From IMG/VR virus record IMGVR_UViG_3300003322_000571, positions 1-64,000 of that record: a stretch of DNA of 64,000 nt, one strand, 5' to 3'. A program made the translations under genes and the position numbers. Each line of letters begins with the position of its first letter. The first letter of the stretch is position 1. The notes beneath the pieces are model-generated. The model was not told the origin of the DNA, ran no database searches, and worked only from the letters and a program-made list of their open reading frames with translations. Shown in pieces: positions 1,586 through 62,390 of the stretch.

Positions 1586-1716
1586 GGTAGATTGGTGTAA
1601 CGGTAGCACGCGTAAACTACCACTAATCGATCTTGTCTCGTCTAGCGACGTTGCGTAGAAAAGTGTTACTTCGCTTTCATTCGCGCGCGGTGGGGGTTCG
1701 AATCCCTCGTCTACCT
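1586..1716 (+). ncRNA. Y RNA-like RNA 4: normally ordered tRNA body with the shared stem in place of the anticodon loop
   Basis: GGTAGAT/GTCTACC acceptor with D- and T-arms; insert TTGTCTCGTC-TAGC-GACGTTGCGTAG...TTACTTC. Confidence 0.7.
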
Positions 1717-1722
1717 CAAATT

Positions 1723-4093: not shown

Positions 4094-4176
4094 GCGGGTA
4101 TAGCTCAGTTGGTAGAGCACCGGTCTTCCAAACCGGAGGCGAATAGTTAACGCAGGTTCGAATCCTGTTGCCCGCT
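4094..4176 (+). tRNA. tRNA-Gly(TCC) with an enlarged variable loop
   Basis: CCGGT-CTTCCAA-ACCGG; variable region of about 15 nt. Confidence 0.85.
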
Positions 4177-4191
4177 CAAATGGAGAAATCC

Positions 4192-4620
4192 ATGATGGAA
4201 TTTGCGCATAACGGTACTGGCATTGTTCGGTACGATCCTCATCGCGGCACGATGAAGTCTAACACGAAGAATTGGTGCGTAATTGACGTTGATCGCGAGA
4301 TCACTCGGTACAACCGGTTCTGGCTTCAACGTGAGAAGCACATCATTCTGCAGCAGCCTGCTTGGGACGCTCACATCTCGGTTGTTCGAGGTGAAAGGCT
4401 TAGCCCCAAAGCACAAAAGCTGTGGAAGAAGTACGAAGGGAAGCGTGTTCCTATTCGGTATGAGCATGGTGATATCCAAATGTCCAAGGACCAAGATCAG
4501 CCTGGTTGGTTCTATTGGATTCGTGTTGACTGCCCGTTCGTGGACGAAATTCGTCAAGAGTTGGGGTTGATCACGAGTTGGAAGTATCATCATATTACGA
4601 TCGGTAGAACTTACTACTGA
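4192..4620 (+). CDS. putative 2H phosphoesterase
   Basis: Two Hx(S/T) motifs: AHISVV and HHITIG. Confidence 0.5.
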   Translation: MMEFAHNGTGIVRYDPHRGTMKSNTKNWCVIDVDREITRYNRFWLQREKHIILQQPAWDAHISVVRGERLSPKAQKLWKKYEGKRVPIRYEHGDIQMSKDQDQPGWFYWIRVDCPFVDEIRQELGLITSWKYHHITIGRTYY

Positions 4621-4631
4621 AGGAGTGGTTC

Positions 4632-4835
4632 ATGAAAGTGGTCACAGATCCTAAAACAGGGAAGCTGCATACTGTTGATAGTCCGTCCGAAGAAAGTATC
4701 AGGCGGAAATTGGCAGAACAGCGTCGTGAACTGCGGGAAATGCTCGCAGGTAACGTTCCTTTTCATGAAGATCAGTGGTCAAAGAAAGAACCACCTGAGT
4801 CTCCTCCCGAAGATCGTTGGGAAGATGACGAATAA
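4632..4835 (+). CDS. hypothetical protein
   Basis: AGGAG RBS; ORF. Confidence 0.6.
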   Translation: MKVVTDPKTGKLHTVDSPSEESIRRKLAEQRRELREMLAGNVPFHEDQWSKKEPPESPPEDRWEDDE

Positions 4836-4836
4836 A

Positions 4837-4938
4837 AGGTCCATGGTGTAACGGCAGCATTCCGGTCTCCTAAGTGCTTGCTCTAATGAGCATTTAGGAA
4901 AACCGTCGGTCGCGGTTCGAATCCGTGTGGACCTGCCA
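4837..4938 (+). tRNA. tRNA-Trp(CCA) with a 28-nt hairpin insertion in the anticodon (4871-4898)
   Basis: AGGTCCA/TGGACCT-G-CCA; removing the insert restores CGGT-CT-CCA-AA-ACCG. Confidence 0.8.
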
Positions 4939-4963
4939 TAACTATAACTATAACAAGGCTCTA

Positions 4964-5206
4964 ATGACAGCTACTGCCAAGAAGATTGTGTTCGCTCCAG
5001 GCGTCCTCGAACAACTCGAATCTGATTTCCAAGGTGAGGAACTCCAACAAGTCCTCGATGAAATTGCACAACTTGCAAATGACCCAACGCAGGGTAAAGC
5101 TGTTAACATGACACAGCTAATGCAAGAAGATCCAGCTTTGTATGCACAGCTGATTACGCAGCTGGAAAGCATTGAAGATAACACTGTAGCACCAACTATT
5201 CAATAA
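4964..5206 (+). CDS. hypothetical protein
   Basis: ORF in operon context. Confidence 0.6.
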   Translation: MTATAKKIVFAPGVLEQLESDFQGEELQQVLDEIAQLANDPTQGKAVNMTQLMQEDPALYAQLITQLESIEDNTVAPTIQ

Positions 5207-10203: not shown

Positions 10204-10278
10204 ACCGCCTTAGTACAGTGGAAAGTACGAGGTCCTCCTAAGACTTAGACACAGGTTCGATTCCTGTAGGCGGTACCA
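10204..10278 (+). tRNA. tRNA-Arg(CCT)
   Basis: Loop CT-CCT-AA; CCA. Confidence 0.9.
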
Positions 10279-47238: not shown

Positions 47239-47919
47239 ATGAAGTACATCGTTGAAGTTCATGCCGCTGAGGGCGGTGACGATAGCAAGTTGTTCGTGAA
47301 GGACCTTGCGCAAGCATACACGAAGTTGTTCCAGCGTTTTGGCTGAAAGCACCGGGTTGTTGTAGAGAAGGACGGCGAAATTCACATTGAAGTGAGTGGC
47401 TCTGATCTATCACAGCTCAACAATGAACCCGGTGGCCATAGGCTTCAACGAATTCCTCCCACGGAAAAACGTGGAAGAGTTCATACGTCCACTGTTACTG
47501 TCGCTGTAATCGATACAGATAGCTATGCGACACCTGATTTTACTCAGATTGATCCTAGTGATTTCAAGATTGAGTGGTACTCAGGAACAGGTGCAGGTGG
47601 ACAGCACCGTAATAAACATCAGAACAGTATCCGACTTACACACGTACCTACGGGGTTAGTTGAGACGTCTCAGTGCCGGAGCCGGGAGGCTTCTCACAAA
47701 GAGGCGATGAGTCAGATGGTGAAGCGGTTGCAGAGCAATGCAAGTTACCAGCGTGTAGTAGCTCAATCAATTGAGCGTAAGCGTCAAATGGGAACAGGTA
47801 TGCGAGGTGACAAAATTCGTACATATCGCTTCCAAGATGATGTTGCCACAGACAACCGTACAGGTAAGAAGGTCAACCTTTCAAAAGTAATGAACGGACA
47901 ATTCGACCTTCTTTGGTAA
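47239..47919 (+). CDS. class-I release factor (RF1-like PxT motif, lacking domain 1) with an in-frame TGA at codon 36
   Basis: EVHAAEGGDDSKLF...FG*K; EPGGHRLQRIPPTEKRGRVHTS; GAGGQHRNK; KIRTY. Confidence 0.9.
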
Positions 47920-56863: not shown

Positions 56864-57472
56864 ATGTTGCAGTATCCCTCTATTGTCGGCTGGAAAAAAG
56901 CACCTATTGGCAAACCGTGTATCGCATTTAACAAGTACGATGGATCAAACCTTCGTTGGGAGTATTCACCCAAACGTGGTTGGAATAAAATGGGTACACG
57001 TCGTTGCATGTTTGATGCAAACACTCCCCTGTATAACCAAGCAATCGAACTGTTTCACGACAGTGGAATGGCTCAGACGATCGTTGATACGACGAATCAT
57101 GCGTTCGGTCGTAAAGTTGAACGTATCACAGCGTTCACGGAGTTCTTCGGTCCGTCGAGTTTTGCAGGTTATCACAAACACGATGAAGCAAAGCAATTGA
57201 AGCTGTTTGATGTGTTTGTGTTCAAGAAGGGGTTCATTCCACCTAAGCAATTTGTCAAGTTGTTCGGTAAACAAGAATGGGCTGCGGAAGTTGTTTACCA
57301 AGGCAATATGAACCAAGAGTTCATTGAAGATGTCCGTAACGGGAAGTATCCTGTGTATGAAGGCGTCATCTGCAAAGGTGAGGACTGGAATGCAAAAATC
57401 AAGACGATTCAATTCCTTGAACGTCTGAAGAACACTCATGCAGATTTGTATGAGGAGGAAAAGAACGAATGA
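56864..57472 (+). CDS. putative ATP-dependent RNA ligase-family protein
   Basis: KYDGSN (motif I), EFFG, LFDV, EGVICK, KIK. Confidence 0.7.
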   Translation: MLQYPSIVGWKKAPIGKPCIAFNKYDGSNLRWEYSPKRGWNKMGTRRCMFDANTPLYNQAIELFHDSGMAQTIVDTTNHAFGRKVERITAFTEFFGPSSFAGYHKHDEAKQLKLFDVFVFKKGFIPPKQFVKLFGKQEWAAEVVYQGNMNQEFIEDVRNGKYPVYEGVICKGEDWNAKIKTIQFLERLKNTHADLYEEEKNE

Positions 57473-62292: not shown

Positions 62293-62390
62293 GCCAGCGT
62301 TTCTAATATTGGCCTTAGGGGTGCCCTTATAAAGCACTAAGACCCGTCTAGATCAGGCGGTTAATGTGGGTTCGATTCCCATCGCTGGTA
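62293..62390 (+). tRNA. tRNA-Ile(TAT)-like with a long variable arm
   Basis: GCCAGCG/CGCTGGT; loop CT-TAT-AA; extra arm of about 28 nt. Confidence 0.7.

What the first reader, a model, noticed from the sequence alone, without database searches (positions are those of the whole stretch)
4837..4938. tRNA-Trp with a 28-nt hairpin splitting the anticodon, with a CUCUAA tip
Seen: removing 4871-4898 exactly restores CT-CCA-AA. Unspliced, it forms an 11-bp extension CCTAAGTGCTT/GAGCATTTAGG with loop GCTCTAAT, which contains an amber-type CT-CTA-A. It is too small for a group I intron. Inference: either a protein-spliced mini-intron (a candidate ligase lies at 56864) making tRNA-Trp conditional, which could link to UGA read-through of the release factor, or a long-armed decoy.
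Basis: partly seen in the sequence, partly recalled or inferred. Interest (0 to 1): 0.75.

Follow-up and report, generated by a model that had tools for sequence, protein, structure and literature searches.

The report
Phage tRNA-Trp gene split by mini-intron
A giant soil phage's only tryptophan tRNA gene has a 28-base hairpin inserted inside its anticodon; related phages show the same oddity beside homing-endonuclease genes, so these look like protein-spliced introns in a bacterial virus, but no RNA data yet show splicing.

Summary
Window 4837-4938 is a canonical tRNA-Trp(CCA) body with 28 extra bases (4871-4898) between anticodon positions 35 and 36. They form a 12-bp hairpin with the anticodon (z = -5.75). 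Six insert-free relatives place the insertion point without ambiguity. An independent 2025 sample holds the same DNA.

It is the only Trp tRNA gene in a 350-kb jumbo myovirus that has uninterrupted genes for the other 19 amino acids. I found four analogous genes: Val in a related IMG/VR contig, and Asn, Lys and Thr in Agrobacterium phage Atu_ph07. All inserts lie inside the anticodon triplet. Four of the five genes are the only one for their amino acid.

HNH homing-endonuclease genes adjoin three of the interrupted tRNAs, including this one in a ~99%-identical strain.

Best reading (about 0.5): a real mini-intron, kept because it shields the gene's DNA from a homing endonuclease. It would be removed from the RNA by a staggered double-strand cut (RNase III-like geometry) and resealed by one of three phage ATP-dependent RNA ligases.

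No RNA data exist. A dead gene or an unspliced decoy is not excluded. The only precedent is the "enigmatic" tRNA introns of Lak megaphages.

The parts
4837..4938 (+). Interrupted tRNA-Trp(CCA) gene with encoded CCA end (4936-4938)
   Evidence: Rfam RF00005 gives 41.4 bits over model positions 1-71. The seven nearest tRNA bodies are all Trp. It aligns with six insert-free Trp tRNAs.
4837..4870 (+). 5' exon: acceptor strand, D arm, anticodon-stem 5' strand 4862-4866, and loop positions 32-35 (CUCC)
   Evidence: Read from the sequence and from the orthologue alignment.
4871..4898 (+). 28-nt insert (putative mini-intron) between anticodon positions C35 and A36
   Evidence: Absent from six relatives. 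Single copy in the genome. Identical in an independent sample.
4868..4899 (+). 12-bp helix (4868-4879 paired with 4888-4899) and 8-nt loop GCUCUAAU (4880-4887). The two junctions lie opposite each other with a 2-nt 3' stagger.
   Evidence: RNAfold minimum-free-energy and centroid structures agree; z = -5.75.
4899..4938 (+). 3' exon: loop positions 36-38 (AAA), anticodon-stem 3' strand 4902-4906, variable loop, T arm, acceptor strand, G73 and CCA
4183..4620 (+). 2H-family phosphoesterase (2H-SAK) gene two ORFs upstream of the tRNA. It could heal 2',3'-cyclic phosphate RNA ends.
   Evidence: Pfam PF22547, 29.8 bits, above the cut-off. The same gene lies upstream of the interrupted tRNA-Val in the related contig G004. 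It is widespread in Rak2-like jumbo phages, so it is not specific to interrupted tRNAs.
4632..4835 (+). 67-aa ORF ending 1 nt before the tRNA. In the run-X2 strain an HNH-endonuclease cassette is inserted between this ORF and the tRNA.
56864..57472 (+).
   Evidence: No Pfam or PHROG hit for this protein itself. It has 571 homologues, and a few of them carry PF09414. K24xD26G27, E93, E166G167..K171 and K178xK180 are invariant. The AlphaFold2 model (pLDDT 92) matches REL1, T4 Rnl1, NgrRnl and T4 Rnl2 at E 1e-8 to 1e-6.

Best explanation
The locus is the phage's tRNA-Trp(CCA) gene carrying a 28-nt intervening sequence between anticodon nucleotides 35 and 36. That much is shown.

What follows is inferred. 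The precursor folds so that the insert and the anticodon form one long hairpin stacked on the anticodon stem. The hairpin is cut out by a double-strand-specific endonuclease that cleaves both strands with a 2-nt 3' stagger, at C35|U and G|A36. The first candidate is the host's RNase III; an HNH-type nuclease is the second. Such a cut leaves 3'-OH and 5'-phosphate ends. One of the phage's three ATP-dependent RNA ligases then reseals the anticodon loop and yields a normal tRNA-Trp.

The insert probably persists because it interrupts, at the DNA level, the target site of a free-standing HNH homing endonuclease that attacks uninterrupted tRNA genes of competing phages. This would resemble the collaborative homing of an intron and a separate endonuclease gene, except that the intron is a hairpin removed by proteins rather than a ribozyme.
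For: **Identity and insertion point**
- Rfam gives a full-length tRNA hit with the insert in the anticodon loop.
- The seven nearest tRNA bodies are all Trp.
- Six insert-free relatives align flush on both sides of the 28 nt.

**Signs that the gene is needed**
- It is the only Trp tRNA among about 57 tRNA genes, which cover the other 19 amino acids.
- The same pattern recurs. Contig G004 lacks any tRNA-Val except one with 29 nt between U34 and A35.
- Atu_ph07 was published as lacking only Asn and Thr tRNAs (PMC6102473). I find Asn, Thr and a Lys gene there with 46, 33 and 48 nt between positions 35 and 36.

**Geometry**
- In four of the five genes the last two intron bases can pair with the two exon bases just 5' of the 5' junction. 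That gives a 2-nt 3' stagger.
- In this gene and in Atu-Thr the stagger lies within a long continuous helix.

**Enzymes in the phage**
- A DraRnl-family ligase at genome 68642-69790.
- An HNH-Rnl2 fusion at 309484-310650.
- The ligase-fold ORF at 56864.
- An HD plus polynucleotide-kinase-like protein at 221144-222268.
- A 2H phosphoesterase next to the tRNA.

**Homing-endonuclease link**
- An HNH cassette abuts this tRNA in a ~99%-identical strain and is absent from this genome.
- Paralogous HNH genes (41% identity, E 9e-19) sit 67 and 83 nt from the interrupted Lys and Thr genes of Atu_ph07.
- In Atu_ph07 the orthologue of the ligase domain lies 1 kb from the interrupted tRNA-Lys.

**Not a repeat element**
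- The insert is single copy and has no target-site duplication.
Against: - No RNA evidence at all. No RNA run was listed.
- The insert is absent from every orthologue found, so it may be too recent for gene decay to show.
- The phage encodes no RNase III, EndA, RtcB or Tpt1, and the host is unknown.
- The ligases, kinase and 2H enzyme are common RNA-repair genes of jumbo phages that have no interrupted tRNAs. RsoM2USA has the HNH-Rnl fusion but no interrupted tRNA that I saw.
- Rnl2/DraRnl-type ligases are known to prefer nicks in duplexes rather than anticodon loops (from my own knowledge).
- The 2-nt stagger rule was noticed after the fact on five cases. Atu-Asn fits only half of it, and three of the helices are only 3-4 bp long.
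- The isotype assignments of the four other genes rest on alignment and identity elements, not on experiment.
Confidence: 0.5

Rival explanations
1. Dead gene. A recent 28-nt insertion inactivated the tRNA-Trp gene. The RNA is never spliced, the phage uses the host's tRNA-Trp, and the gene has not yet decayed.
For: The insert is absent from all six orthologues found, so it is young. No RNA data exist. Bacteria and this phage lack a tRNA-splicing endonuclease. The homing-endonuclease neighbourhood shows that the locus is a hot spot for mobile DNA, and mobile DNA can simply damage genes.
Against: The interrupted gene is the only Trp gene in an otherwise complete set. Only about 4 of roughly 57 tRNA genes here are single-copy for their isotype. 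The same coincidence recurs for Val in G004 and for Asn and Thr in Atu_ph07. The insert is not random sequence: it pairs with the anticodon to form a 12-bp helix (z = -5.75). All five inserts sit inside the anticodon triplet rather than at random places in the genes.
Confidence: 0.2
2. Functional unspliced RNA. A tRNA-shaped molecule with a long anticodon arm could act as a decoy or sponge for host anticodon nucleases or other tRNA-binding defence proteins. Alternatively it could present a CUCUAA tip for some other interaction.
For: The acceptor, D and T arms and the CCA end are intact while the anticodon is buried in a helix. The phage and its relatives carry further tRNA-like genes with large inserts in place of the anticodon arm, such as window 1586-1717, which do not parse as simple introns. 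Phage tRNAs with altered anticodon loops that evade host nucleases have been described (PMC10264068, listed).
Against: A decoy need not be the sole representative of its isotype, and need not restore a perfect 7-nt loop on exact removal. The tip loop has 8 nt, not 7. The hairpins of the five inserts share neither sequence nor tip motif. The link to homing endonucleases is unexplained by this reading.
Confidence: 0.13
3. Archaeal/eukaryal-type splicing. A bulge-helix-bulge motif would be cut by an EndA-like endonuclease, leaving 2',3'-cyclic phosphate and 5'-OH ends. The 2H phosphoesterase, the kinase and an ATP-dependent ligase would then heal and seal them, as yeast Trl1 does.
For: The phage has the healing and sealing parts: 2H-SAK beside the tRNA, a kinase and ligases. 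The anticodon pairs with the insert, as in archaeal and eukaryal precursors.
Against: No two 3-nt bulges separated by 4 bp appear in the predicted structure. The position is 35/36, not 37/38. There is no EndA catalytic domain and no Tpt1 in the genome.
Confidence: 0.07
4. Self-splicing or self-cleaving RNA: a group I intron or a small ribozyme.
For: All bacterial tRNA introns characterised so far are group I introns in the anticodon loop (from my own knowledge).
Against: 28 nt is far below any known group I intron or self-cleaving ribozyme. An Rfam E-value scan of 4700-5100 finds only the tRNA.
Confidence: 0.02

Closest known systems
'Enigmatic' introns in tRNA genes of Lak megaphages (Devoto et al. 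2019, PMC6784885; noted again for jumbo phages in PMC13037316)
   Same: Both are phage-encoded tRNA genes with short non-group-I insertions in the anticodon loop. The insertions are present in some alleles and absent from others, are identical where present, and have no known splicing machinery.
   Different: The phage clade and host are different: a soil XacN1/Atu_ph07-like myovirus against gut Prevotella phages. Here the insertion point is fixed inside the anticodon (35/36) by six insert-free relatives. The Lak introns were predicted at the canonical position and found to be offset by one nucleotide. The two long Lak-A1 tRNA hits I read did not parse like these. The homing-endonuclease association and the 2-nt stagger are not described there.
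Archaeal and eukaryal protein-spliced tRNA introns (bulge-helix-bulge, EndA/Sen, RtcB or Trl1)
   Same: Both are short introns in the anticodon loop that pair with the anticodon and are removed by proteins. A cut-heal-seal logic is possible with the ligase, kinase and 2H enzymes.
   Different: There is no bulge-helix-bulge motif, the position is 35/36 or 34/35 rather than 37/38, there is no EndA, RtcB or Tpt1, and the host is bacterial.
Group I introns in bacterial tRNA genes (cyanobacterial tRNA-Leu, Agrobacterium tRNA-Arg, Azoarcus tRNA-Ile)
   Same: Both interrupt the anticodon loop of a bacterial-type tRNA, sometimes within the anticodon itself.
   Different: Those are self-splicing ribozymes of 200 nt or more. 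This insert is 28 nt and has no ribozyme signature.
Intervening sequences of enterobacterial 23S rRNA excised by RNase III
   Same: Both are extra hairpins grafted onto a stable-RNA helix. The predicted cut sites lie opposite each other with the 2-nt 3' overhang typical of RNase III.
   Different: rRNA fragments are not religated and still work. A tRNA cut inside its anticodon must be resealed. RNase III cleavage is not shown here.
Collaborative homing: a free-standing homing endonuclease plus an intron that disrupts its target (cyanophage psbA intron/F-CphI; T4 SegB in the tRNA region).
   Same: Free-standing HNH endonuclease genes lie directly beside the interrupted genes. They show presence/absence polymorphism between near-identical strains.
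   Different: The intron in the known cases is a self-splicing group I intron. The cleavage specificity of these HNH enzymes is untested.
T4 Pnkp/Rnl1 repair of anticodon-loop breaks
   Same: A phage ATP-dependent ligase would seal a broken anticodon loop through 3'-OH and 5'-phosphate ends.
   Different: That system repairs damage by a host nuclease and does not remove a genetically encoded insert. The ligases here belong to the DraRnl and Rnl2 families or are a minimal ligase domain, not Rnl1.

Membership tests
tRNA-Trp (bacterial type) | Cloverleaf with the conserved tRNA nucleotides | tested here: met
   RF00005 matches at 41.4 bits over model positions 1-71. U8, A14, G18G19, A21, the TTCGAAT T-loop and G53-C61 are read from the sequence.
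tRNA-Trp (bacterial type) | CCA anticodon, A1-U72 and G73 (identity elements, from my own knowledge) | tested here: met
   The CCA anticodon appears only after removal of 4871-4898. A1-U72 and G73 are present. The seven nearest tRNA bodies are all Trp(CCA).
Protein-spliced BHB tRNA intron (archaeal/eukaryal) | Bulge-helix-bulge: two 3-nt bulges separated by a 4-bp helix that carry the splice sites | tested here: not met
   The predicted structure is a continuous 12-bp helix with only a 1x2 internal loop below it.
Protein-spliced BHB tRNA intron (archaeal/eukaryal) | EndA/Sen-family splicing endonuclease available | tested here: not met
   PF01974 is absent from the 350-kb genome while the archaeal controls are positive. 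The host genome is unknown.
Protein-spliced BHB tRNA intron (archaeal/eukaryal) | Intron is removed from the RNA and the exons are ligated | not testable with these tools
   No RNA run was listed.
Group I intron in tRNA | Ribozyme core (P3-P9), about 200 nt or more | tested here: not met
   The insert is 28 nt, and no Rfam family other than tRNA matches 4700-5100 at E <= 1.
Phage tRNA 'enigmatic introns' (Lak type) | Phage tRNA gene with an anticodon-loop insertion that is absent from related alleles and is not group I | tested here: met
RNase III-processed hairpin | The two scissile bonds lie across a double-stranded RNA helix with a 2-nt 3' overhang | tested here: met
   C34-G and C35-G pair with the last two insert bases, and the first insert base pairs with the third from last. 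This is geometry only.
RNase III-processed hairpin | Actual cleavage by RNase III | not testable with these tools
   The phage has no RNase III gene. The host enzyme is presumed, not shown.
Collaborative homing pair (free-standing endonuclease + intron) | Homing-endonuclease gene adjacent to the interrupted gene and variably present | tested here: met
   The X2 strain has an HNH cassette abutting the tRNA that is absent here (the Pfam HNH score of 18.3 bits is below the cut-off, but the pairwise E is 8e-4 against the Atu HNH). Atu_ph07 has paralogous HNH genes 67 and 83 nt from two interrupted tRNAs.
Collaborative homing pair (free-standing endonuclease + intron) | The endonuclease cuts the uninterrupted allele and spares the interrupted one | not testable with these tools
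   Needs an enzyme assay.
ATP-dependent RNA ligase (ORF 56864-57472) | Nucleotidyltransferase fold with motifs I (KxDG), III, IV (EGxxxK) and V (KxK) | tested here: met
   The motif residues are invariant in 20 aligned homologues. Foldseek against the PDB gives REL1 at E 1.4e-8 and T4 Rnl1 at 2e-7. Pfam does not detect this protein itself.

The most novel reading that the evidence does not exclude
XacN1/Atu_ph07-like jumbo phages carry a previously undescribed class of anticodon-splitting mini-introns of 28-48 nt, inserted between tRNA positions 34/35 or 35/36. In this reading the introns are removed by a staggered double-strand RNA cut (host RNase III or a phage HNH nuclease), and the loop is resealed by a phage ATP-dependent RNA ligase. 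They spread or persist as immunity tags against free-standing HNH homing endonucleases that target tRNA anticodon DNA. This would give jumbo-phage 'RNA repair' ligases a housekeeping splicing role. It would also be the first protein-dependent tRNA splicing pathway in a bacterial system.
Probability: 0.25. Interest if true: 0.88.

Novelty: new variant of a known kind. Interest (0 to 1): 0.72.

Why it matters
Bacteria are thought to have no protein-dependent tRNA splicing. Their only known tRNA introns are self-splicing group I ribozymes. Short non-ribozyme inserts in phage tRNAs were flagged as 'enigmatic' in 2019 and have not been explained.

This locus and its four analogues do three things:
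- They fix the insertion sites exactly, inside the anticodon.
- They show that the interrupted genes are usually the phage's only gene for that amino acid, so they are probably needed.
- They tie the inserts to homing endonucleases and to phage RNA ligases.

Three of the analogues lie in a cultivable phage, Atu_ph07 on Agrobacterium tumefaciens C58. The question can therefore be settled with ordinary RT-PCR or tRNA-seq. If splicing is found, it would reveal a new RNA-processing pathway and a new use for phage RNA ligases. It would also correct the published tRNA inventories of these phages.

Tried and rejected
**Searches for the tRNA or its insert that found nothing**
- Exact-pattern scans of viral contigs for the interrupted tRNA or its halves.
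- A protein-anchored search with the neighbouring 2H gene.
- blastn of the tRNA against GenBank phages, which gave only generic T-arm matches.
- A search for RNA-seq runs: none was listed.

**Calls and ideas I rejected or revised**
- ARAGORN's own intron call, 'tRNA-Pro(AGG), 26-nt intron at 31/32'. It needs a C-A mismatch and an A34 anticodon, and it contradicts the orthologue alignment.
- A CCU (Arg) reading with the intron at the canonical 37/38 position. The body is Trp, and the genome already has tRNA-Arg(CCU) at 10204-10278.
- My first idea of a fixed 35/36 position. The G004 gene turned out to be Val(UAC) interrupted at 34/35.
- A repeated mobile element: the insert is single copy and has no target duplication.
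- A transcription terminator: none was called at the hairpin.

**Leads that were uninformative**
- Long Rfam tRNA hits in LR756508, which proved to be long variable arms, and one in Phosso, which is an insert-bearing tRNA-like RNA and not a simple intron.
- The two long tRNA hits of Lak-A1, which did not parse like these.
- Profile comparison of the 56864 protein family with the Atu ligase and with PDB sequences. Only the structure search worked.
- The 2H-SAK gene as a marker of interrupted tRNAs: it is widespread in Rak2-like phages.

**Not run**
- Complex prediction, because binding of any tRNA by a repair ligase would not discriminate between the hypotheses.

Full report
**1. Genome context**

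The window is the first 64 kb of a 350,089-bp IMG/VR virus record from a root metagenome. It is a jumbo myovirus with a tail sheath, portal and large terminase. The terminase is 47% identical to that of Xanthomonas phage XacN1 and 41% to that of Agrobacterium phage Atu_ph07. It is 76% identical to those of four IMG/VR contigs, one of which (183 kb) I call G004.

The assembly is circularly permuted, and a tRNA-Pro gene spans its ends. The genome holds about 57 tRNA genes, a tmRNA and a GOLLD RNA.

**2.

Rfam's tRNA model matches 4837-4935 over its whole length at 41.4 bits, with a 30-nt unaligned block in the anticodon loop. Default ARAGORN misses the gene.

The body is canonical:
- acceptor AGGUCCA/UGGACCU;
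- a D arm with G18G19;
- a TTCGAAT T-loop;
- G73 and an encoded CCA end.

Removing 4871-4898 gives the arm CCGGU-CUCCAAA-ACCGU. The junction cannot slide, because the bases on either side of each boundary differ.

RNAfold pairs 4868-4879 with 4888-4899. That is 12 bp including two G-U pairs, with the 8-nt loop GCUCUAAU. For 4862-4906 the energy is -20.9 kcal/mol against -7.2 +/- 2.4 for shuffles (z = -5.75).

**3. The insert is real DNA**

Contigs of the source run and of an independent 2025 rhizosphere run carry it. The latter holds a strain about 1% diverged in the flanking genes. It has no difference in 4835-4938, and no insert-free allele was seen.

**4. It is tRNA-Trp, and the insertion point is exact**

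With anticodon loops removed, the seven most similar tRNA bodies among 310 from this phage and its relatives are all Trp(CCA).

I ran a degenerate pattern built on the D arm and anticodon arm, allowing a 0-30-nt gap. It found six further genes:
- G004 c40930-41004;
- one more IMG/VR contig;
- four metagenome contigs.

All six lack the insert. In the alignment they read ...CGGTCTCC|AAAACCGT..., and this genome alone has 28 extra bases at the bar. The insert lies between C35 and A36, and among the orthologues found it is unique to this lineage.

**5. It is the only Trp gene**

ARAGORN and Rfam together find uninterrupted genes for 19 amino acids, plus two CUA suppressors, but no other CCA anticodon. 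Only Met, His, Tyr and Cys are otherwise single-copy.

**6. The same thing occurs in relatives**

Scanning relatives with the Rfam tRNA model and looking for over-long hits gave four more genes. I assigned each by alignment to uninterrupted tRNAs.

| Gene | Isotype | Insert | Junction |
|---|---|---|---|
| G004 c26466-26567 | Val(UAC) | 29 nt | U34\|A35 |
| Atu_ph07 c323905-324023 | Asn(GUU) | 46 nt | GU\|U |
| Atu_ph07 c68159-68280 | Lys(UUU) | 48 nt | UU\|U |
| Atu_ph07 c335108-335213 | Thr(UGU) | 33 nt | UG\|U |

- The G004 gene is nearly identical in its exons to the XacN1 and Xoo-sp13 tRNA-Val genes, and G004 has no other Val gene.
- The Atu-Asn gene has U1-A72 and G73.
- The Atu-Thr gene has G1-C72, C2-G71 and A73.
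- The Atu_ph07 paper reports tRNAs for all amino acids except Asn and Thr (PMC6102473). These are exactly the two I find as interrupted genes.
- The record's feature table lists no tRNA at the Lys locus.

So all five inserts lie inside the anticodon triplet, and four of the five genes are the sole gene of their isotype. That is hard to reconcile with random gene damage.

XacN1, Xoo-sp13, RAS14, RsoM2USA, Phosso and LR756508 showed no clear case.

**7. Structure at the junctions**

I folded the five anticodon arms with the anticodon stem enforced. In this gene and in Atu-Thr, positions 34 and 35 pair with the last two insert bases and the helix continues into the insert. The two junction phosphates therefore face each other with a 2-nt 3' overhang. 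That is the geometry left by RNase III-family enzymes (my own knowledge).

The same register is possible in short helices for Val (UU/GA) and Lys (UU/AG). It is only half possible for Asn.

By a rough estimate, four of five full matches would arise by chance about twice in a thousand. However, I found the rule after trying several others. There is no bulge-helix-bulge motif.

**8. Enzymes**

The phage lacks RtcB, RNase III, the EndA catalytic domain and Tpt1.

It does encode:
- a DraRnl-family RNA ligase at genome 68642-69790 (TIGR02306, 239 bits);
- an HNH-Rnl2 fusion at 309484-310650;
- an HD plus polynucleotide-kinase-like protein at 221144-222268;
- a 2H phosphoesterase at 4183-4620, two ORFs upstream of the tRNA.

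It does have 571 homologues, a few of which carry PF09414. The motif residues K-x-D-G, E, E-G-x3-K and K-x-K are invariant. A confident model (pLDDT 92) matches REL1, T4 Rnl1, NgrRnl and T4 Rnl2.

All three ligases are of the type that joins 3'-OH to 5'-phosphate. These are the ends left by RNase III or HNH nucleases.

These genes are also common in jumbo phages without interrupted tRNAs (PMC7824862). They therefore permit the model rather than prove it.

**9. Homing-endonuclease link**

In the near-identical strain of the 2025 run, two contigs show a cassette inserted exactly between the stop of the 67-aa ORF and the tRNA. AAAGGTC flanks it on both sides. It ends in a protein with the HNH signature (...CEVCGE...FHH...N...CHNCH...). 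Pfam scores it at 18.3 bits, below the cut-off, but it matches the Atu HNH at E 8e-4. This genome lacks the cassette.

In Atu_ph07 the arrangement repeats:
- The interrupted tRNA-Lys has an HNH gene (Pfam 30.8 bits) 67 nt from its 5' end, divergently oriented.
- About 1 kb downstream of that tRNA lies the 40%-identical orthologue of this phage's HNH-fused ligase domain.
- The interrupted tRNA-Thr has a gene annotated 'homing endonuclease' 83 nt from its 5' end in the same arrangement.
- The two endonucleases are paralogues (41% identity, E 9e-19).

This looks like the known pairing of a free-standing homing endonuclease with an intron that breaks its target site.

**10. Mechanism, and what is shown versus inferred**

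- Shown: the gene identity, the exact insert, the hairpin, its reality as DNA, the analogues, the gene inventories and the endonuclease neighbours.
- Inferred: that the RNA is spliced at all; that the cut is a 2-nt-staggered double-strand cut; that a phage ligase seals it; and that the insert protects the DNA from the HNH enzymes.

I put 'spliced to a working tRNA-Trp' near 0.55-0.6. The specific RNase III-like-plus-ligase route is about half as likely as that.

The rivals are a recently killed gene (0.2), an unspliced decoy (0.13), EndA-style splicing (0.07) and self-splicing (0.02).

**11. Comparison with the literature**

The only precedent I found is the 'enigmatic introns' of Lak megaphage tRNAs (PMC6784885), echoed in PMC8346664 and PMC13037316. 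Searches for a described mechanism found none.

The present case differs from that precedent in four respects:
- the phage clade;
- the position inside the anticodon;
- the junction geometry;
- the endonuclease link.

I therefore rate it a new variant of a known but unexplained kind.

**12.

The RF1-like ORF 47392-47919 has PPT and GGQ motifs and PCRF plus RF-1 domains. It shows no in-frame stop in its match and no connection to this tRNA.

The CUCUAA tip resembles the loop of the phage's own CUA suppressor at genome 332868 (CUCUAAA). However, it sits in an 8-nt loop, and none of the other four inserts has such a tip.

Noticed in passing
window 1586-1717; also L030:17023-17151(-), L031:4369-4498(-), L063:55-226: A family of tRNA-like genes has normal acceptor, D and T arms (D arm GUGUAAYGGYAGCAC) but 50-100 nt where the anticodon arm should be. 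Its members in this genome and in G004 share the block TTGTCTCG...GTTGCGTAGA.AAAG.GTTACTTC. ARAGORN calls two of them 'SeC(UCA) with intron'. They do not parse as simple anticodon introns.
   Followed up: partly
window 62293-62390: A 98-nt Rfam tRNA hit (32.4 bits) that ARAGORN misses. It has a 9-nt anticodon loop (CCUUAUAAA) and a variable arm of about 27 nt. The isotype is unclear.
   Followed up: no
window 4094-4177: tRNA-Gly(UCC) with an unusual variable region of about 17 nt. It is 77% identical over 91 nt to the tRNA-Gly of Yersinia phage fHe-Yen9-04 and other Rak2-like jumbo phages.
   Followed up: no
genome 330097-330508 (L003:10097-10508), outside the window: A GOLLD RNA (207 bits) lies 2.4 kb upstream of a CUA suppressor tRNA. 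XacN1 and RAS14 also carry GOLLD next to their tRNA arrays, and XacN1 and Xoo-sp13 also show tmRNA-family hits there.
   Followed up: no
genome 304537-304906 (-), 332868-332944 and 344214-344286, outside the window: A phage-encoded tmRNA (betaproteobacterial type, tag ANEGNFRLAA) and two CUA (amber-reading) tRNAs. Stop-to-stop ORF statistics do not clearly indicate a recoded genome.
   Followed up: partly
window 47392-47919 (+): A 175-aa release-factor fragment (end of the PCRF domain plus an RF-1 domain, with PPT and GGQ motifs). It lacks the N-terminal part of a full RF1 and lies just after tRNA-Arg(UCU).
   Followed up: partly
window 4835-4841 compared with Logan contigs L075 and L072: A strain about 99% identical (2025 rhizosphere run) has an extra gene cassette ending in an HNH-type endonuclease. 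It is inserted immediately 5' of the interrupted tRNA and flanked by AAAGGTC on both sides. The middle of the cassette is not covered by the two contigs.
   Followed up: yes
genome 346357-346437 and 349474-349554, outside the window: Two paralogous tRNA-like genes with enlarged anticodon arms (inner loops UUCAGAC and CUCAAAC). ARAGORN reads them as carrying 7-8-nt 'introns'. Further odd cases are a 4-base anticodon call at 342827-342896 and a 6-nt anticodon loop at 344595-344667.
   Followed up: no
window 4846-4861 (D stem of the tRNA-Trp): This tRNA-Trp and its insert-free relatives have U11-A24 in the D stem. From memory, that is the pair created by the Hirsh UGA-suppressor mutation of E. 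coli tRNA-Trp. It is a lead on UGA reading that I did not test.
   Followed up: no
L062 (LR756508.1 437352-437467): A weak tRNA-like hit (25 bits) in an uncultured 484-kb phage. Its insert contains UGAUGAG ... GAAAC, which recalls a hammerhead ribozyme core. I did not check this with a ribozyme model.
   Followed up: no
genome 308844-309374 (-), outside the window: An Acb1 anti-CBASS gene (118 bits) lies directly next to the HNH-Rnl2 ligase gene. A CYTH-domain gene and a TelA gene flank the DraRnl-type ligase.
   Followed up: no
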